The position numbers were made by a program, and so were the translations under genes. A stretch of DNA of 36,422 nt from Octopus bimaculoides (Eukaryota), in the NCBI RefSeq assembly GCF_001194135.2, contig NC_068992.1:35417819-35454240 (forward strand), in the 5' to 3' direction. Positions within the stretch are counted from its first letter, which is position 1. Every line of letters starts with the position of its first letter. This document shows, piece after piece, positions 7,170 through 28,452 of the stretch. The notes under the pieces were generated by a model. It was not told the DNA's origin. It made no database searches and saw nothing but the letters and a program-made list of their open reading frames with translations.

Positions 7170-7385
7170 GGCGGCGAGCTGGCATAAACGTGAGCACGTC
7201 GGACGAAATGCTTAGTGATATTTCGTCTGTCTTTACGGTCTATGTTCAAATTTCGACGCGGTCGACTTTGCCTTTCATGCTTTCGGGGTCGACAAATTAA
7301 GTACCAGTTGTTTTCAGGGGTCGATCTAATCGACTGGTCCCCTTCCCCAAAATTTCCGGCCTTGTAACTCGAGCAGAAAAGAATA
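7170..7385 (+). mobile_element. tRNA-derived SINE, octopus type, family A (diverged copy)
   Basis: GGCGGCGAGCTGGC head, B-box-like GTTCAAAT, body GGTCGACTTTGCCTTTCAT..TTTCGGGGTCGA..AAGTACCAGTT. Homologous to 12334-12565. Confidence 0.85.
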
Positions 7386-10973: not shown

Positions 10974-12194
10974 TCAGGTCATCCCAAAAGTTCTGTCTGA
11001 ATTTTGAATAAAGAAAACAAGTGATCAAATGTTAAGTTTAATTGAAATTTAATCAGCAATGTACTTTCCCTGATTATCTGTGACTTCCTTCCATCTATTT
11101 ACAAGATTTTTAAACTCATCAATGTAAAACTCTTTTGGTTTCAAAGCGAAGAACTCTGAAATGTCAGTTTCGACCGCCTCCTTCGTTGCGAAAGTTATGT
11201 CCCCCAAATGTTTCTGTAAACTACAAAACAAATGGTTGTCTGAAGGAGCAAGGTCGTAAGAATAAGGTGGATGTGGAATTTTTTCGCATCCATGCTCTTC
11301 GATCTTCTACTCCTTTTCGATTCACTAAAGCGGGTCTCTTTTCTTCAAAGCTTGGTTCAAACGCTCTAATTTCTGACAGTAGACTTGAGCATTAATTGTT
11401 GCATTAGGTGGTAACATTTCAAAGTGAATTACTCCTTTGCAATCCCACCAGATAGAGAGAAGAACCTTTTTCCCATGAAGTTCCCTTCTCGGTTGTGGTT
11501 GAACTTTTTCTCTTTTACCAAGCCACTGTTTACGACGTTTAACATTTCGATAGAAGATCCAGTTTTCGTCACCAGTCACAAGTCTATCCAAAAAGGGTGA
11601 AATGAGTTTGCGAGAATGGACAGAAGAGCGGATGCCAATTCGGGATTTGCGGTTGCTTTCAGACAATTCATCAGACGCTCATTTTTCCAAGTTTAGGAAG
11701 CTTTCCATGTTGTCGAAGATGACGATGAACAGTTGTATGGTTTTAAATAAGCGTTATTGCCAATTCTTCAACTGATAATGCAGGATTTTCTTCAATGCAG
11801 GATTTTCATCAAACTCAACTGGATGTCCTGATCAATCTTCATCTGCAAGGCTGAAATCTCCATTTCTGAATTTTGCAAACCATCTTCTGCAAGTTCTTTC
11901 ATTCAGGCATTCTTTCCCATAAACTGAGTGTATGTTTCGAGTCGCTTCGGCTGCAGGAGTTTCCTACTTTGTACTCATAAAGCATTAAGTGCCTCAAATG
12001 CTATTTGGATACTTCCATGTTAGAAAGGGTTTTAATCAAAAAAATATTAAATCCATTATTCTGTAAAATAATATTTAAGTAGTTTAAATGTACACAAATG
12101 CACAAAAAATAATTTTTAATTCCATTAGACATTCTAAAATACTATTAAATTTCTTAAAAAGGTAAAATGGGCCAGAACTTATGGGATGAACTGA
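10974..12194 (-). mobile_element. Near-full-length mariner DNA transposon
   Basis: Terminal inverted repeats TCAGGTCATCCCAAAAGTTCTG and TCAGTTCATCCCATAAGTTCTG (reverse complement of right end), a TA dinucleotide on each side (10972-10973, 12195-12196), length 1221 bp, internal transposase relic. Confidence 0.95.
11049..12018 (-). pseudogene. Mariner transposase pseudogene
   Basis: MEVSK*HLRHLMLYEY..AAEATRNIHSVYG..RRWFAKFRNGDFSL (HTH), FLDRLVTGDENW (first catalytic D), LLSIWWDCKGVIHFE, PHPPYSYDLAPSDNHLF (third D), ..NQGKYIAD*. Contains stops, frameshifts, a ~17-bp tandem duplication near 11774-11807, and lacks the HDNARPH segment. Confidence 0.93.
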
Positions 12195-12333: not shown

Positions 12334-12565
12334 GGCGACGAGCTGGCAGAAACGTTAGCACTCCGGGCGAAATGCTTAGCGGTATTTCGTTTGCCGCTAC
12401 GTTCTGAGTTCAAATTCCGCCGAGGTCGACTTTGCCTTTCATCCTTTCGGGGTCGATTAAATAAGTACCAGTTACGCACTCGGGTCGATATAATCGACTT
12501 AATCCGTTTGTCTGTCCTTGTTTGTCCCCTCTGTGTGTAGCCCCTTGTGGGTAGTAAAGAAATAA
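12334..12565 (+). mobile_element. tRNA-derived SINE, family A, apparently full length, with candidate target-site duplication
   Basis: GGCGACGAGCTGGCAGAAACGTTAGCA..GAGTTCAAATTCCGCCGAGGTCGACTTTGCC..GTAGTAAAGAAATA. The 13-mer ACTACTCTACACA occurs on both sides (12312-12324 and 12567-12579). Confidence 0.9.
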
Positions 12566-12944
12566 TACTACTCTACACAAAGTTCTTTTTACAAATAACA
12601 GAATAACACTGGACGACATGCATTTGCTCCATTTAGTTAGTATATCAACAACATCCAGGTAAATCTTTAAACTTACATGTAAAACACAGGCATTGCTACT
12701 CAAATAAAAATAGATATCGATGAATTACTTAATATTTTAAAGAATACGTGAAACCGATAATGTCAGTCTGTAAAATTGGGTACTAGTCGAAGGTAACTAT
12801 TCTGTTATGACACTAATGCATTTCCATATTTCTCAGATGCCCGAACCATTGAATTTGAGCAGTGAAAAACATCAAGTTTACGCATCGGGTAAAAACATTA
12901 ATTGGACATCATAGCAACTAGCTTACTGACAATCTCCTGATGTA

Positions 12945-13440
12945 CATATTGAAATTCCTCTTGAAGGCTCTGGATTTGGCAAGGCAATTCACCAATACAA
13001 GCATCCTCCATGTCAGAATCATGAACACCAGAAAGTTAATCCTGGTTCACAACGATCCTTCCTTCTGCGTGAAGAAAGAAAGCGATCCAATGTGTTCGAC
13101 ATATCTATAGGGTGCTACAACGGGTCTGAAATCGCCGACCTCATCGGGTTGCATATCTTGGATACCATCAAGAAACGCACATACTTACACAGGTCACCCC
13201 TTTACAGGGACGACAGCCTGGAAATATCTAAACCAGTTGAAGGGCCACGCCATGAACAACTTTAGGAAGGACCTCATGAAAATAGCCAAAGCAATTGGTC
13301 TGTCCCTAATAGTTACCACCAACTAGACCACGGTCGACTTCCTAGACGTGACTGAAAACAGGCAAGTATTAACCACACAAGAAGCCCAACGAGGAAACTG
13401 TGTACATTGACAGAAGCTTCAAGCAGCCCCACCCCATACT
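12945..13440 (+). mobile_element. Penelope-like element reverse transcriptase fragment
   Basis: Manual translation: LLKALDLARQFT..; FDISIGCYNGSEIADLIGLHIL..LYRDDSL; FRKDLMKIAKAIGLSL..TN*TTVDFLDVT; KKPNEETVYIDRSFKQPP. These match the PLE RT pattern MGSYDGAE..LYRDDGL..VDFLDVT..KPN..YI..SNHPP. Confidence 0.85.
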
Positions 13441-14020
13441 CATATTTACTCATATTTACATACTCACATTTACCAATCATCCATACGCACACACACACAT
13501 CCATACATGCATCTTAAACACGTATGCTGACACACATACGGGCATTAACGCACACATATTCGCACACACACACACACATTCTGACATACAGTCATACAAC
13601 TGATACATTATTACGGCGCCAGTGTTAATCGTAAACTAATTTTGATAAGTTGTTTTAAATTGCATGGTTGTGTAATCTCTTAGTTACTCTTTTGCCCGTT
13701 TTAAGTGCACCTTATTCTCCTCAATTTTCGAATGTTAAGTTTAAATGAACCACTGTTCCAATTGACATTGGATTTCTCCAGATCGATGTAAGAAATCTCA
13801 CTTGTGTGAAGCCTTTCCCGTTTAAAATGTAAATGATGATGGTGGATCATATATTACGATGCAATCTTCTATGAGTGCATTGAAAAAAGTTTACTGATAT
13901 AGCTGTCGCAAATATGGAATGTCATTTGTGTTAACTTTTTATACCTTCGGACAGCAAGGTCCAGCCACAGAATCGGACTTACGGTGTAAATTGGATTTGC
14001 TACCTGTATATCTACAATGT

Positions 14021-17919: not shown

Positions 17920-18640
17920 TCACAGTACTTCACGGTAGACAATATTTTGTGTGTATGTCACACCACGTTTTTGGCCTTGTCTGTTATCCCAATTGAGTAT
18001 CATGACTCTTACTTTGATATTGTTCATAGCTCGTGCTCTTGAAAATGCGACATAATTGGCCATGAGGAAATACCGGTTGAGGCAAATGTATTCCAACTGT
18101 TTCAAATGTTTGCCCTTGAGCCTTATTAATTGTCATTGAATATGCAAGTCGAAGTGAAAACTGAAATCTGTTTAGTGTAAATGGAATATTTGCATCACTT
18201 GGGCTAAGTTAAATTCTGGGAATTAGAACTGTACGACCTCTGTTGGAGTCCGTTACCAATGATGCCGCTACATAACATTCATAAAGCCTTTGCACTTTCA
18301 TGCGAGTTCCATTACATAATCCTTGACTGATCGAAAGATTTCTTAGCAGCATTATAATAGCCCCTACTTTTAAGTTGAAGCGATGAGGAGGCGTACCGGA
18401 TGGTGTGAGTGAGTTTATGAACTCAAATGGATAGTTCTGAACCTCATCTTCATTATTGAAGGACACTGAAACTGCGCTTAAGTACGTTTTAAGTACGTCT
18501 GGTATAATATTAAGAACTTTGTCATTTATTCCAAGACAGTCGGAATTTTTAGGAGATATAATTACTCGTTTTACCATTTCTTCTGGCGTGCAGTTGTTGA
18601 AAATTTCTGGATTAAAATGTACAAATTGACATGCAAAAGA
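17920..18640 (-). mobile_element. Helitron Rep/helicase fragment (PIF1-like helicase C-terminus)
   Basis: ISPKN..INDKVL..YPFEFINSLTPSGTPPHRFNLKVGAIIMLLRNLSISQGLCNGTR..TVLIPRI*LSPSD..RFQFSLRLAYSMTINKAQGQT (motif V), HGQL(fs)VAFSRAR (motif VI), TQNIVYREVL*. One in-frame stop and one frameshift. Confidence 0.93.
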
Positions 18641-23618: not shown

Positions 23619-24600
23619 GTCTGTCTGCGTGTGTATGCGTGTGTGAGTGAGGATGGAAGTGTGTGTCTGTGCGTTTACATATGTGTGTGTTGTTGTGTGT
23701 GTTTTGTATGTTCAGGTATATGTGTAGAGGTATATGTGCATTCATGTGTGCGTGCGTGTGTGTGTGGGTGGGTGTATGTATGTGTGTGTGTGTGTGTGCA
23801 TGTGTGCGTGTGTGTGCGCGTGTATGAATGATGGAGGGGAGAGGTGGAGTGTGGGTGCGTGGTCTGAAGATGGTGTGAATGGATGAGAGTGGCTGCATGT
23901 GCGTGTTAACATGTGTGCATAGACGGAGTGGGAATACGTATATGTGTGTGTGTACGTGTATGGGTGTGCGTGTGTGTTTCCATCTTTGTGTGTCATTCTG
24001 CTGCTCTCTCTTCCTCTGTATTAATATGTGTGTGTAACTATCTCTTTGTTTCTCTGTTGAGTGTGTGTGTGGAAGTGTATGTACATGCGTGTATATGTGT
24101 GTATATATGTGTTTGTGTGTGCGTTGTGTGTGTATTATGTGTGTAGAGGTAGTGTGTGTGTTGAAGGTTGTGTGGATTTCTGTGTGTGTGCATGTGTATG
24201 TACGTGCGCGTGCGTATGTGAGACGGAGAGCGAGTGGTATGTGGTGTGTGGTGTGTGGTATATGAATATGTGATATTAAAATTAATACAAATAATAGGTA
24301 ATACAAATTATACAAATTATACAAATAATATGTAGGAATTGGTAAAATATAACCATAAAGGAAAAAGATTATATAAACAAATCAGTGACACAAATAAATA
24401 AAAACACAAAAACAAAAACAATAAAAAATAAGATAAAATAAGATAATAGAAGAAAATTAAAATAAATAAATAAACTAATAAAAAAGCGAATGAAAAGTCG
24501 GATAAAAATAACCGAATGAAAGAATAAAAGAATAAACGATAAAAAGTCGTAAATAAACAATAACAGTTATAAAAAAATAGGGTAAAATGTTATTTTCTAA
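23346..24600. repeat. Complex GT-rich cryptic repeat (to ~24275) followed by an A-rich (AAAT-type) tract
   Basis: Degenerate GT/GTAT/CT repeats with reiterated blocks such as ACGGAGTGGG(G)AAT, then low-complexity A-rich sequence. Explains the H/T-rich and C/V-rich ORFs. Confidence 0.85.
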
Positions 24601-24607
24601 GGGACAG

Positions 24608-25770
24608 TCATTCAGAGGAGGTGGGTTGCGTTGAGTCGGAAAGGAGTTTGTGTATGTAGAGTAAAAATGTAACGCTGTTCCAGGAGAAGTCTAGAGTTGG
24701 TGGATCCATTGTGTAGAGCAAGGCCAAAGACGGTGATATTTGAGGTGGAGTGAGTGGCCAAGCGAAAATGACGGGCGACGCTGGTGTTCGGAAGTAGACA
24801 AACACTTCGTAGATGTTCAAAGAACCGGTCGGTTAGCTAGCGGTCCGTCTGACCAACGTAAAGTTTGTTGCAGAGATTACACCTCCTGCAGTAAATAATG
24901 CTGGAAAAAGTTCAGGAGAAGGATTTCCTAATGTAGAAGGTTTGCTGGTTGGATCCGGTGAGGGAATTGGTATTAGTTATGGAAGAACAGCTCTGGCAAC
25001 TGGATCTGCAACAAGGAAAGAGAGAGTGCTATGGACTAGTAGATCGTTTAGGGCGCGTTTGAAGAAAGGTAAGGGTGGGTTGGGGAAAATAGGGAGGGTG
25101 CTGGAATCTAGCTGGAGGTGACGGAAGGTCCGCAGGAATGCGGGTAAGGGCAGTTAGGTGGATGAGTATCCGTGACGCATGAACAAGCGGTCGAGGTACT
25201 CGAAATCCTGGTCCCAGCTGCATAGGCGTCAGAGGTGGAGGAACTGGGAGTAGGGGATGGCCAGTTTGTTGTGGCAAGAGTGGGAGGAGGAAAAATTGAG
25301 GTAGATTTGGGAGTCCGTGGGTTTGAAGAAGTTGGAGTTGGTGAGAGGGTTGGAGGAGGAATCAATGGAGAGAGAGATATCCAAGAAGTTTTGGAGGTAG
25401 TATCGCTCTGGAATCGGTGCGGATATTGTGAGAATATTTGGGCCTCAACGCAAGCAACAGATAATTTGGCGAAATTGGGGCCTATTATCTTTCCTATAGC
25501 GACGCCAGGGAAATGTTTGTAAATCACTCCCGCGAACGTAAATCAGTTGCGGGTGAGGACGAGTTCTGCTAGGCGAAGAAGGGTTGATGTGCTGGGGTGG
25601 GCTCAGAGCGACAGTCAAGAAAGTATTATAGGGTTAAGAAACCGTCGTTGTGAGAGTTCACCGTATACGAGGATTTTCTGTCCCAGGTGAAAAGGGGGCA
25701 TGAAGGGCCGGGACGGAAGGAGAGGGAATTGAACAGGCGAAGGAATGGTTTGTGTCACGTATGTGGAATG
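24608..25770 (-). mobile_element. Penelope-like element, RT plus GIY-YIG endonuclease relic, 5'-truncated
   Basis: Across frameshifts: LPSHIRDTNH..YFLDCRSEP..STLLRLAELVLT.N.FTFAG..GVAIGKIIGPNFA (RT), FLDISLSI, then SIIYCRRCNLCNKLYVGQTDR*LTDRFFEHLRSV..VARHF (GIY-YIG with the PLE-typical CxxC between its two strands). Ends at a (TA)n tract. Confidence 0.9.
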
Positions 25771-25913: not shown

Positions 25914-26224
25914 NNNNNNNNNNNNNNNNNNNNNNNNNNNNNNNNNNNNNNNNNNNNNNNNNNNNNNNNNNNNNNNNNNNNNNNNNNNNNNNNNNNNNNN
26001 NATATGTATATATCGACTTTAAATGGAGCTCAAAACTTATCCATTGAAAATACTTTATTATAATATTAATAATAATGAAAAAGACCTATGAAAATTTCGA
26101 TGCAATATCCAGAATGATTCATACATATAAGATATTATAAAATACTATATTCTTTTGCCAAAATTTTTGGTATATAAAAAAATATATATAAACATATATA
26201 TGTATATATATATATATGTGTGTG

Positions 26225-26420
26225 TGTGTCTCTGTGTTTGTACCCCCACCATCACTTTCAACTGATGTTGCTGTGTTTACGTCCCCGTAACTAAGCCGTT
26301 TGGCAAAACTAACTGATGAAAGAAGTACTAGGCTTAAAAAGACTAAATCCTGCGGTCGATTTCTTCGACGAAAGGTGGTGCTGCAGCATGGCCTCAGTCA
26401 TATGACGGAAACAAGTGCAA
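26225..26420 (+). mobile_element. 3' half of an octopus-type SINE, family C
   Basis: GTGTTTGTACCCCCACC..GTGTTTACGTCCCCGTAACT..GTACTAGGCTT..GGTCGATTT..GGTGCTGCAGCATGGCC.CAGTCA..GAAACAAGT after a TA/TG microsatellite. The family link to 29558-29678 is recalled, not demonstrable inside the window. Confidence 0.8.
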
Positions 26421-26555
26421 CAATAAAAAATCTATGCCATTTTAATCCCGAGCAACGCCGGGTATCTCTGGTATCACACACATACACACACACATGTATG
26501 GCAAATGAAAGACTGAAGATGGAATATACCAGGTGTAACCCTTTCGTTTTATTAT

Positions 26556-26592
<37 letters not shown>

Positions 26593-26598
<6 letters not shown>

Positions 26599-27282
26599 CC
26601 TTCAAACACTGAGATTTGAAGTTAGATGTCACTACTGTTCATATCATCTATGGATAAATTCAAAGTTTGATGATATCACCAGTAGTGGCATGGGTGGAAC
26701 GCAATTATAATAGCTTTAAGCAGCTATGAACTATAAATTTGCACGAAGTGTAATGATGCTTAATAAGCATCTACCTGCTAGAAATAAGAGCTAAGTCTTA
26801 AAATAATCCACCGTAGCGCACCAATATAACAGAGAAAAACAGTATGCCAGGAAAACAGAGAATTAAAATATTTAACAGCACAAATAAAAATATTATGCAA
26901 TTAGGGATATCCACAAACCAGGTTTCGGCTTTTGGGTATTTAACCCTAAGCCTCGTCAGTGTGGACCACCAGTTTAAATCCGTGACTGTTCATGTTAATC
27001 TCTGACTGTGCAACTGGTTTTGTTTTGCGCCAAAAACAGAGCACTTGGTGCATAAAAATGTATAAATGAAACATTCAAACACTGTGATTTGAAGTTAGAT
27101 GTCACTACTGTTCATATCATCTGTGGATAAATTCAAAGTTTGATATCACCAGTAGTGGCATGGGTGGAACGCAGTTATAATGGCTTTAAAGAGCTATGAA
27201 GCGTAATGCACGAAGCGTAATGATGCTTAATGAGCATCTACCTGCTAGAAATAAGAGCTAAGTCTTAAAATAATCCACCGTA
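26593..27282 (-). mobile_element. Retrozyme-like element: ~220-bp direct repeats (26593-26815, 27066-27282) around a 250-bp spacer holding a hammerhead motif
   Basis: The repeats differ by about 12 substitutions and two 3-bp indels; period 473 bp. (TA)n lies directly on both outer sides. The repeat structure is seen directly; the retrozyme call is inference. Confidence 0.7.
26910..26965 (-). ncRNA. Minimal type I hammerhead ribozyme motif
   Basis: Minus strand reads TCCACA-CTGACGA-GGCTT A GGGT TAAAT ACCC AA AAGCC-GAAA-CCTGG-TT-TGTGGA. It has both conserved core boxes, a perfect 6-bp stem I, an extended stem II, a near-palindromic stem III (ACC-T-GGT) and a GUU triplet. Predicted cut between 26916 and 26915. 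Confidence 0.85.
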
Positions 27283-27424
27283 TATATATATACAAACATA
27301 TATATTGCATAATATATCAACAATATTAATAATGATTACTATGAAGTTGCATAGCACTACCTTTATTTCTTTAATTTATATACAACTTTACACTGACCCT
27401 TGGCATTTACAAATATATATATGC

Positions 27425-27471
<47 letters not shown>

Positions 27472-27782
27472 TGCGTATGTGTATGTGTGTGTGTATGGAT
27501 TGATAGATTTCCAAATCCTTTAATAATAATCATAATTAAGAATGCTTATCCTTCTATTTTGAATGATCTATCAAACTATCTTCAATGAGTTTCACTTTAA
27601 ATAGATAATTCCAAGTATGCTGAAGACGTTTCGAGTATATTTATAATGTTTTGAAATGAATATAACATCCTCATATATTGAAAGATTTTATTGCATAACT
27701 TGATGGTTCCATACAAAGAATATTTTTCTTTAATACACTATTTTATGGTCTGTTTCACACTTTCTTCACTTTCTTTTTCTGC

Positions 27783-27855
<73 letters not shown>

Positions 27856-28355
27856 GCTTTCTCTGTCAGTGGATTCACACTGGGAAAATACTTAATGGAC
27901 TCCTTTGATTATATGAACGGCAGTACTTGATAGGTACTTATTTGACCCAATTTTGAAGTGTACCAATACCTTCGGGGAAATATGAAATTAGATAGTAAAG
28001 TATATGCTAATACTATAAACTGTGCAGCTTTCTGAAGCCCATAGTAATCGCTTTATATATTTCACACACAATTTACAAATTTTTTCAACATGAAAATAAC
28101 ATACAAACGAAGACTGATTGAAAATAGAAAAAGAAAAACTCTGCTGTGCGTGACTGTGGCTTTGAACTGTTTGATCACCGTTTCTGAACTCCTGGTTTGG
28201 CCCCATCTGACAATCAGCTATTCCCTAACAAACATCCGAACGGATACTTAATAGAACTTTCCATAACTATCTAAACAAATCAATGGTTTTGTGCAAGCAT
28301 GCGGTTTCAGGCCCAAAGACCAAATTTTCAGATGCTCATTTTTCTTTTAGACACT

Positions 28356-28452
28356 AAAGACAAAGTTGACCTCGGCGGAAATTGAACTCAAAACGTAAAG
28401 ACAGACGAAATACCAGTAAGTACTTCGTGCTAACATTTCTGCCAGCTCGCCC
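28356..28452 (-). mobile_element. SINE family A, 5' fragment
   Basis: Reverse complement GGCGAGCTGGCAGAAATGTTAGCAC..GGTATTTCGTCTGTCTTTACGTTTTGAGTTCAATTTCCGCCGAGGTCAACTTTG matches the heads at 7170 and 12334. Confidence 0.88.

What the first reader, a model, noticed from the sequence alone, without database searches (positions are those of the whole stretch)
26593..27282. Retrozyme-like 473-bp unit present as a ~1.5-mer within a (TA)n tract
Seen: repeat A (223 bp), a 250-bp spacer holding the hammerhead, repeat A' (217 bp), about 93% identity by manual count, no meaningful ORF, and TA runs at both outer junctions. Established: metazoan retrozymes are non-coding tandem units with one hammerhead per monomer; they yield circular RNA and are thought to be mobilised by Penelope-like RT, whose remnants lie about 0.8 kb away and at 12945. 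Inference: a greater-than-unit-length cDNA of a circular or multimeric ~470-nt RNA, i.e. a candidate cephalopod retrozyme family. Alternatives are a PLE pseudo-LTR remnant or an ordinary local duplication. I cannot tell whether it is already catalogued.
Basis: partly seen in the sequence, partly recalled or inferred. Interest (0 to 1): 0.82.

Follow-up and report, generated by a model that had tools for sequence, protein, structure and literature searches.

The report
Solo hammerhead-ribozyme retroelement copy in octopus-like DNA
This is a real but dead 1.46-unit copy of a ~473-nt non-coding element with one intact-looking hammerhead ribozyme, inserted into a TA microsatellite; it fits the known animal retrozyme / Penelope-like-element world and is of modest interest.

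Summary
A (26595-26815) and A' (27068-27282) are direct repeats, 91.9% identical with gaps counted, 473 bp apart. They enclose a 252-bp unique segment and are flanked by (TA)18 on the left and (TA)5 on the right. The hammerhead lies on the minus strand (26966->26909). It is type I with a complete catalytic core, a 7-bp helix I, a long helix II and a minimal helix III. My descriptor finds exactly one such motif in the window, against 0.003 expected by chance. It stays far below Rfam's curated thresholds.

The unit is non-coding, 36% GC, and strongly structured as RNA (z about -4). A decayed Penelope-like element (RT thumb plus GIY-YIG) lies 0.9 kb away on the same strand. The claimed PLE remnant at 12945 was not confirmed.

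Best reading: an old, more-than-unit-length cDNA copy of a hammerhead-bearing, PLE-dependent non-coding element (a non-LTR retrozyme, or the closely related terminal region of a PLE), integrated into an AT-rich target.

The locus has only one ribozyme, so it cannot release a unit-length RNA itself. Whether a family, arrays or circular RNA exist could not be tested, because no octopus genome data were reachable. Verdict: new member of a known kind at most.

The parts
26559..26594 (.). (TA)18 microsatellite, left flank. This is the target-site side next to the element's 3' end on the minus strand.
   Evidence: TRF period 2, 18 copies, 100% matches; sequence
26595..26815 (-). Repeat A (221 nt). 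It is the 3'-terminal part of the complete unit when read on the minus (ribozyme-sense) strand.
   Evidence: blastn 91.9% to 27068-27282, E 1e-88; alignment; families D5-D7
26626..26691 (.). Imperfect ~20-bp hairpin inside A. The equivalent hairpin in A' is at 27099-27161.
   Evidence: self inverted match, 73% over 66 nt; it forms in the MFE folds of both polarities
26816..27067 (-). Unique 252-nt segment of the unit. It carries the hammerhead.
   Evidence: only a self-match in blastn/nhmmer; no similarity to 27 PLE proteins
26909..26966 (-). Type I hammerhead ribozyme motif.
- Helix I: GUCCACA/UGUGGAU, 7 bp including one G-U.
- Core: CUGACGA and GAAA.
- Helix II: GGCUU/AAGCC plus GGGU/ACCC with a 5-nt loop.
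- Helix III: minimal, A-U and C-G around CUG.
- Cleavage triplet: GUU, cut between 26916 and 26915.
   Evidence: structural descriptor finds 1 hit in the window, 0.003 expected per random window; relaxed scan finds no other; helices I and II appear in MFE folds; Rfam gives only 18.4 bits to Hammerhead_3 (gathering 48.5) and 16.1 bits to RAGATH-1-hammerhead
27068..27282 (-). Repeat A' (215 nt). On the minus strand it is a 5'-truncated upstream partial unit, and it lacks the ribozyme.
27283..27292 (.). (TA)5 run, right flank, followed by AT-rich sequence
   Evidence: sequence; alignment end point
24600..25685 (-). Decayed, frameshifted Penelope-like element remnant (RT motif B, HTH_animal thumb, GIY-YIG endonuclease). 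It lies on the same strand as the ribozyme, 0.9 kb downstream of it. This is context, not demonstrably part of the unit.
   Evidence: protein search hits all carry PF26215 HTH_animal, with or without RVT_1; the best hit is an Octopus bimaculoides UniRef protein; tblastn map

Best explanation
The 688-bp block is a dead, more-than-unit-length (1.46x) DNA copy of a ~473-nt non-coding RNA whose sense strand is the window's minus strand. The RNA carries one canonical-type type I hammerhead ribozyme per unit. This makes it a non-LTR retrozyme-type element that depends on a Penelope-like element.

Proposed life cycle (all steps inferred from published work on such elements, none shown here):
1. Tandem source copies are transcribed.
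2. Hammerheads of adjacent units pair through their minimal, near-palindromic helix III (ACCUGGU) into an active dimer and cut the multimer into 473-nt monomers.
3. A tRNA ligase (RtcB type) circularises the monomers.
4. The RT/GIY-YIG protein of an autonomous PLE nicks AT-rich DNA, here a (TA)n microsatellite. It then copies the circular or multimeric RNA for more than one turn. This gives A'-unique-A flanked by TA repeats.

Since insertion, the two overlapping parts have diverged by about 5.6% plus two 3-nt indels. That is roughly 8 My on the published octopus TE clock, if they were identical at insertion.

Only one ribozyme is present. A transcript of this locus could therefore be cut once but could not release a unit-length RNA. 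The locus is a fossil, not a source copy.
For: Shown here:
- The direct repeat at 473-bp spacing is far beyond chance.
- The type I hammerhead has every conserved core position (C3-A9, G12-A14, A15.1-U16.1, H17=U, G10.1-C11.1). It is the only such motif in 33 kb, against 0.003 expected.
- The architecture is a 6-7-bp helix I and a 1-2-bp helix III with a small near-palindromic loop. This matches the 'canonical metazoan type I' hammerhead that PMC4209133 describes in tandem repeats and as active in dimers. It does not match the PLE 'min-HHR', which has no helix III and a bulged base before helix II.
- There is no ORF above 63 aa and no protein relatives.
- GC is 36%, as published for animal retrozymes (<45-50%, PMC7229834).
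- The unit length of 473 bp lies inside the 51-972 bp range of retrozyme consensus sequences in 10.64898/2026.07.22.740005.
- The monomer RNA is unusually structured: -126.8 kcal/mol, z -4.3, 0 of 100 shuffles as stable. The hammerhead helices I and II are preserved in the global fold.
- TA repeats sit on both sides. AT-rich/(TA)n target preference is published for PLE endonucleases (PMC8557442; PMC11167929).
- A PLE remnant lies in the same window, and PLEs are abundant in octopus genomes (PMC13282606).
Against: - Only one locus was seen, with 1.46 units and a single ribozyme. There is no array.
- No other copy could be found: none in the window and none in any reachable collection. Family status, register, permuted ends and RNA are therefore untested.
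- The hammerhead scores far below Rfam gathering thresholds (18.4 vs 48.5 bits).
- The cleavage triplet GUU is allowed but is not the commonest.
- The RNA structure signal is almost as strong on the other strand (z -4.0), so it does not identify the sense strand.
- The same anatomy is produced by a 5'-truncated partial-tandem PLE insertion.
- 473 nt is above the 170-400 nt range first reported for animal retrozyme RNAs.
Confidence: 0.5

Rival explanations
1. This is the terminal (pseudo-LTR) region of an autonomous Penelope-like element: two heavily 5'-truncated copies joined head to tail, the usual partial-tandem product of PLE integration. A' would be the last 215 nt of one copy. Unique segment plus A would be the last 473 nt of the next copy. 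Full-length relatives would continue upstream (minus-strand sense) into the GIY-YIG/RT ORF.
For: PLEs are found as partial tandems that form pLTRs. They carry hammerheads in those terminal regions, and most PLE hammerheads occur as single motifs from truncated copies (PMC4209133; PMC8557442). (TA)n/AT-rich targets are a PLE trait. A PLE remnant lies 0.9 kb away on the same strand. Retrozyme consensus sequences in Xenopus match PLE termini.
Against: There is no PLE coding similarity inside 26595-27282. The neighbouring PLE remnant shares no sequence with the unit and is separated from it by TA/TG microsatellites and an assembly gap. The hammerhead is of the canonical tandem-repeat type, not the min-HHR type typical of metazoan PLEs. 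It sits in the unique part, not in the repeated arms.
Confidence: 0.3
2. The true locus is a longer tandem array of 473-bp hammerhead units (a satellite-like retrozyme array), and the draft assembly collapsed or truncated it to 1.46 units.
For: The window is a gap-rich draft scaffold with 10 N runs totalling 3237 N. Published PLE work notes that tandem insertions are mis-assembled in short-read assemblies (PMC8557442).
Against: There is no N gap inside or next to the block; the nearest is 25914-26001. Both outer junctions run directly into TA repeats and unique flanks. A and A' differ at 12 sites plus 2 indels, so they were assembled as distinct sequences.
Confidence: 0.08
3. This is an ordinary local duplication of about 220 bp in AT-rich DNA, unrelated to retrotransposition. 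The hammerhead-like motif would be a chance match or a relic of something else.
For: Only one locus is known. Rfam does not reach threshold. Microsatellite-rich DNA is prone to slippage and rearrangement.
Against: A motif meeting the full type I descriptor is expected 0.003 times per window. Its falling inside a 688-bp block is less likely still. A simple tandem duplication would give two whole copies, not A-unique-A bounded exactly by TA runs. The RNA structure z-score is about -4.
Confidence: 0.05
4. This is a miniature LTR-type element (TRIM, or a plant-style LTR retrozyme), with A and A' as LTRs and the 252-bp segment as the internal domain.
For: The LTR-internal-LTR geometry and sizes resemble TRIMs. 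Plant retrozymes have this layout (PMC4918200, listed).
Against: By direct reading:
- The arms do not have TG...CA termini.
- No primer-binding site abuts either arm on either strand.
- There is no convincing polypurine tract.
- The ribozyme is type I and lies in the internal part, not type III in the LTRs.
- No discrete 4-6-bp target duplication can be read in the TA tract.
Confidence: 0.02

Closest known systems
Animal non-LTR retrozymes (Cervera & de la Pena 2020, PMC7229834; Li, Clavereau & Pollet 2026 preprint 10.64898/2026.07.22.740005)
   Same: Non-coding, low-GC unit of a few hundred nt with one type I hammerhead per unit. Head-to-tail, more-than-unit arrangement. No LTR, PBS or PPT. 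Co-occurrence with PLEs. Solo or 'monomer' derivatives that cannot transpose are reported as common.
   Different: Here there are only 1.46 units and one ribozyme, with no array. The unit (473 nt) is longer than the 170-400 nt RNAs first described, although within the 51-972 bp consensus range of the 2026 preprint. No copy number, RNA or circularity data exist. I found no report from cephalopods in the searchable library.
Penelope-like element pseudo-LTRs with hammerheads (Cervera & de la Pena 2014, PMC4209133; Craig et al. 2021, PMC8557442)
   Same: Partial-tandem direct repeats, a hammerhead in the terminal non-coding region, insertion into AT-rich/(TA)n DNA, and frequent truncated solo copies.
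   Different: No RT/EN ORF lies between or next to the repeats. The hammerhead has a helix III and no bulged base before helix II, unlike the metazoan PLE min-HHR. The ribozyme lies outside the duplicated arms.
Classical hammerhead-bearing repeats: newt/salamander satellite 2 and Schistosoma Sm-alpha (own knowledge, plus the summaries in PMC4209133 and PMC7229834)
   Same: Type I hammerhead with a very short helix III that needs a dimeric conformation. Units of ~330 nt, tandem or dispersed, non-coding.
   Different: Those are high-copy families with demonstrated transcripts and self-cleavage. Here copy number and activity are unknown.
Plant LTR retrozymes / TRIMs (PMC4918200)
   Same: Small non-autonomous element with direct terminal repeats and a hammerhead. 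Proposed circular RNA intermediate.
   Different: The plant elements carry type III hammerheads inside the LTRs, have a PBS and PPT, are GC-rich and are mobilised by Ty3/Gypsy. None of these applies here.

Membership tests
Hammerhead ribozyme, type I | Conserved core CUGANGA ... GAAA with A15.1-U16.1, H17 not G, and the G10.1-C11.1 pair | tested here: met
   CUGACGA 26959-26953, GAAA 26926-26923, U16.1 at 26917, U17 at 26916, G10.1 (26952)-C11.1 (26927). Read; descriptor hit.
Hammerhead ribozyme, type I | Three helices in type I topology (helix I open, helices II and III closed) | tested here: met
   Helix I 7 bp, helix II 5+4 bp, helix III 2 bp. Helices I and II appear in the MFE folds. Helix III is too short to be stable as a monomer.
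Hammerhead ribozyme, type I | Reaches the curated Rfam score for a hammerhead family | tested here: not met
   No hit at gathering score. The best hits are 18.4 bits to Hammerhead_3 (cut-off 48.5) and 16.1 bits to RAGATH-1-hammerhead (cut-off 56.3).
Hammerhead ribozyme, type I | Self-cleavage activity | not testable with these tools
   Needs in vitro transcription of monomeric and dimeric constructs.
Animal non-LTR retrozyme | Tandem head-to-tail units, each with its own hammerhead (at least two ribozymes per locus) | tested here: not met
   1.46 units and one hammerhead at this locus. TRF calls no 473-bp array. Other loci could not be examined.
Animal non-LTR retrozyme | Non-coding, low GC, no LTR/PBS/PPT | tested here: met
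   Longest stop-free stretch 63 aa; no protein relatives; GC 36%; no PBS or PPT on reading.
Animal non-LTR retrozyme | Multi-copy family dispersed in the genome | not testable with these tools
   There is no second copy in the window.
Animal non-LTR retrozyme | Expressed as unit-length linear and circular RNA | not testable with these tools
   No transcriptome access.
Animal non-LTR retrozyme | Co-occurrence with autonomous PLEs in the same genome | tested here: met
   Decayed PLE copy at 25685->24600. Active or ancient PLE expansions are reported in Octopus (PMC13282606).
PLE pseudo-LTR pair | Direct repeats flanking (or continuous with) an RT + GIY-YIG ORF | tested here: not met
   tblastn of 27 PLE proteins gives no hit in 26595-27282. 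Continuity with an ORF in other copies is untestable.
PLE pseudo-LTR pair | Hammerhead located within the repeated (pLTR) arms | tested here: not met
   The motif lies in the unique 252-nt segment. A and A' contain none.
Plant-type LTR retrozyme / TRIM | Type III hammerheads in the LTRs, PBS and PPT, 4-6-bp target duplication | tested here: not met
   The motif is type I and lies in the internal part. No PBS or PPT adjoins the arms. The flanks are TA repeats.
tRNA-derived SINE | tRNA-like head | tested here: not met
   ARAGORN finds nothing in 26000-28000. There is no Rfam tRNA, 5S or snRNA hit.

The most novel reading that the evidence does not exclude
The block is a fossil of a so far undescribed cephalopod retrozyme family. 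Its source arrays would produce ~473-nt circular RNAs, larger than the classical animal retrozyme RNAs, using a dimer-dependent canonical type I hammerhead. Octopus Penelope-like elements would spread it into (TA)n microsatellites.
Probability: 0.3. Interest if true: 0.45.

Novelty: new member of a known kind. Interest (0 to 1): 0.3.

Why it matters
If a family stands behind this locus, it would extend hammerhead retrozymes to cephalopods. Cephalopod genomes are repeat-rich and have documented PLE expansions. It would also add a class of small, highly structured, possibly circular RNAs to octopus transcriptomes. Finally, it would give a clean example of PLE-type integration into (TA)n.

This single locus only adds one more solo hammerhead-bearing fossil to a phenomenon that is already well described across metazoa. 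It does not open a new question.

Tried and rejected
1. Rfam at gathering score over the whole window: nothing. Only sub-threshold hammerhead matches appear in E-value mode.

2. Search for further copies in the window by blastn and nhmmer: none.

3. Reaching other genomic copies through spurious ORFs. A concatenation of all stop-free stretches of the unit was searched against 5.8 billion proteins: no hit.

4. Pattern scans:
- Hammerhead pattern in JGI metagenome contigs and IMG/VR: 7 loci, all unrelated sequences.
- A 22-mer conserved between A and A' in GTDB genomes and IMG/VR: nothing.

5. Reaching octopus PLE loci:
- Two protein searches (PLE remnant; O. bimaculoides P0007) returned only distant relatives, at most 46-61% identity over short stretches.
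- Their contigs (L001, L002, L010-L012) share no nucleotide similarity with the window or the unit.
- Ten window ORFs are not in the protein collection.

6. The 12945 'PLE remnant': no Pfam hit, no tblastn hit from 27 PLE proteins, and hhalign probability 0.14%. It looks RT-like by eye, but PLE membership is not supported.

7. tRNA/SINE origin: ARAGORN negative.

8. TRIM/LTR reading: rejected, because no TG..CA ends, PBS or PPT can be read in the sequence.

9. RNAcofold of two hammerhead segments predicts a more stable dimer (-52.1 vs 2 x -22.3 kcal/mol). The predicted pairing is a domain swap rather than the textbook extended helix III, so I do not lean on it.

Full report
OBSERVATION

Repeat A (26595-26815, 221 nt) and repeat A' (27068-27282, 215 nt) are direct repeats. 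blastn gives 91.9% identity over 221 columns, E 1e-88. The repeat finder splits them into three in-register pieces with spacings of 473, 470 and 467 bp. The MAFFT alignment shows 204 of 216 aligned bases identical, 8 transitions, 4 transversions and two 3-nt deletions in A'.

Between the repeats lie 252 unique bases (26816-27067). On the left is a perfect (TA)18 tract (26559-26594). On the right the homology stops at ...CCACCGTA and runs into (TA)5 followed by CAAACATATATATT. The left boundary is uncertain by up to about 10 nt, because the unit itself ends in ATGTATAAAT, which resembles the TA tract. That is the kind of microhomology expected if cDNA synthesis was primed in the microsatellite.

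No N gap touches the block; the nearest is 25914-26001. There is no other copy of A or of the unique segment in the 36-kb window by blastn or nhmmer. TRF does not report a 473-bp repeat because there are only 1.46 copies.

THE RIBOZYME

The hammerhead is on the minus strand. Read 5'->3' on that strand it is:

GUCCACA CUGACGA GGCUU-A-GGGU-UAAAU-ACCC-AA-AAGCC GAAA C-CUG-G U U | UGUGGAU

- Helix I has 7 pairs (26966-26960 with 26915-26909).
- The 5' core is 26959-26953.
- Helix II is bipartite and 9 pairs long (26952-26927).
- GAAA is at 26926-26923.
- Helix III is minimal (A-U and C-G around CUG).
- Cleavage is predicted after U17, between 26916 and 26915.
- Every conserved core position and the G10.1-C11.1 pair are present.

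A descriptor I wrote required helix I of at least 5 bp, helix II of at least 3 bp, helix III of at least 1 bp, and H17 not G. It finds exactly this one motif on both strands of the window. It finds 0.003 motifs per composition-matched random window. A relaxed scan, which allows core variants, a bulged base and no helix III, finds no second one.

Against this, Rfam's curated models are not satisfied. There is nothing at gathering score. E-value mode gives only 18.4 bits to Hammerhead_3 (cut-off 48.5) and 16.1 bits to RAGATH-1-hammerhead; the latter alignment does follow the type I reading. The long helix II and the near-absent helix III explain the low scores. I report the motif as structurally complete but not curated-model-positive.

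Its architecture is a 6-7-bp helix I, a 1-2-bp helix III and a small near-palindromic loop (ACCUGGU). PMC4209133 calls this the canonical metazoan type I hammerhead of tandem repeats, inefficient alone and active as a dimer of adjacent copies. It differs from the PLE min-HHR, which has no helix III, a bulged base before helix II and a 4-5-bp helix I.

THE UNIT

The unit is non-coding. The longest stop-free stretch on any frame is 63 aa, and a protein search with all such stretches found nothing. GC is 36%.

I took a 473-nt monomer starting at the predicted cleavage site. It folds to -126.8 kcal/mol, against -102.5 +/- 5.6 for dinucleotide shuffles (z -4.3, 0 of 100 as stable). Hammerhead helices I and II are kept in the global fold. 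The complementary polarity is almost as structured (z -4.0), so this supports 'compact structured RNA' but does not name the strand. Part of the signal is a ~20-bp imperfect hairpin inside A (26626-26691) that recurs in A'.

SURROUNDINGS

A composite translation of a decayed ORF on the minus strand retrieved proteins that all carry PF26215 (HTH_animal, the PLE RT thumb), with or without RVT_1. The closest is an Octopus bimaculoides UniRef entry.

tblastn of all 27 retrieved PLE proteins maps them to 25685->24600 only. They cover RT motif B, the thumb and the GIY-YIG endonuclease, with several frameshifts. So a PLE fossil lies 0.9 kb from A, on the same strand as the ribozyme and downstream of it. 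It is separated from the unit by TA/TG microsatellites and an assembly gap, and shares no sequence with it. I treat it as evidence that PLEs were active in this genome, not as part of the unit.

It has no Pfam hit, no tblastn similarity to the 27 PLE proteins, and an hhalign probability of 0.14% against their profile. It is not confirmed.

HOW IT MOST LIKELY AROSE

Published work supplies the following:
- Type I hammerheads in animals sit in non-coding, AT-rich tandem units. These are transcribed, self-cleaved, circularised by a tRNA ligase and thought to be copied by PLE RT (PMC7229834).
- PLEs integrate as partial tandems, and their endonuclease prefers AT-rich/(TA)n DNA (PMC8557442; PMC11167929).
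- Circular templates would explain more-than-unit copies (PMC4209133).
- Retrozymes are related to PLE pLTRs, and non-mobile monomer derivatives are common (10.64898/2026.07.22.740005).

The locus fits this scheme. It is a 1.46-turn cDNA of a 473-nt hammerhead RNA, or of a multimer, primed in a (TA)n tract. The steps from transcription to integration are inferred, not shown.

If A and A' were identical at insertion, their JC distance of 0.058 corresponds to about 8 My. This uses the clock in PMC13282606 (JC 0.09 = 25 My), where distances are measured from copy to consensus, so I halved the pairwise distance. If the template was a multimer of already diverged units, the date is meaningless.

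Only one ribozyme is present and it is of the dimer-dependent kind. The locus therefore cannot release a unit-length RNA.

RIVALS

The main rival is a pair of heavily 5'-truncated PLE ends joined head to tail (a pLTR fragment). It predicts the same local anatomy. Only three weak points count against it: the absence of any coding remnant, the canonical rather than min-HHR ribozyme type, and the ribozyme lying outside the repeated arms. I give it 0.3, against 0.5 for a separate non-autonomous retrozyme family. The 2026 preprint suggests the two grade into each other.

Assembly collapse of a longer array (0.08), a plain local duplication with a chance motif (0.05) and a TRIM/LTR-type element (0.02) are less likely, for the reasons given under each rival.

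WHAT COULD NOT BE DONE

The decisive test is other copies in the genome, and it was out of reach:
- Metagenome, viral and prokaryotic genome scans gave only unrelated sequences.
- The protein collection holds essentially no octopus genomic ORFs.
- The PLE-bearing contigs I could fetch come from unrelated organisms.
- In the searchable literature I found no paper linking cephalopods with hammerhead retrozymes. That is absence from this library, not proof of novelty, and I could not consult Dfam or Repbase.

VERDICT

This is a new member of a known kind at most, and the locus itself is a fossil. Interest 0.3.

Noticed in passing
window 24600-25685 (minus strand): Decayed Penelope-like element copy with several frameshifts: RT motif B, HTH_animal thumb and GIY-YIG endonuclease. 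The closest relative is an Octopus bimaculoides UniRef protein (61-70% identity). No hammerhead was found downstream of its ORF end.
   Followed up: yes
window 12930-13500 (plus strand): RT-like remnant (FDISIGCYNGSEIADLIGL...LYRDDSL...KKPNEETVYIDRS) spread over two frames. It has no Pfam hit and no detectable similarity to 27 PLE proteins, so its family is unknown.
   Followed up: partly
window 11325-11666 (minus) and 18209-18577 (minus): A mariner-type transposase fragment (Pfam Transposase_1, E 8e-27) and a Pif1 2B-domain fragment, probably from a Helitron-type helicase (E 8e-20).
   Followed up: partly
window 28356-28451; 12339-12439 (minus); 7173-7275 (minus): A dispersed repeat of about 100 bp present three times in the window at 77-80% identity. 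It may be a SINE and was not classified.
   Followed up: no
window 26626-26691 and 27099-27161: An imperfect hairpin of ~20 bp inside A and A'. It lies 30-95 nt from the element's 3' end on the ribozyme-sense strand. A' has lost 3 nt of one arm. It might be an RT recognition structure, but this is untested.
   Followed up: partly
L007 32-64 (JGI Ga0315909_10380144) and L009 7845-7877 (IMGVR_UViG_3300042691_025948): Two unrelated environmental contigs share the same complete hammerhead-like motif (CTGATGAGGCTT...AAGCCGAAAC GAGCC...GGCTC GTC). The pattern scan picked them up; they have nothing to do with the window.
   Followed up: no
whole window: This is a draft-quality scaffold: 10 N runs (3237 N), 35% GC, and very dense TA, TG/CA and TC microsatellites. 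Tandem structures elsewhere in it may be collapsed.
   Followed up: no
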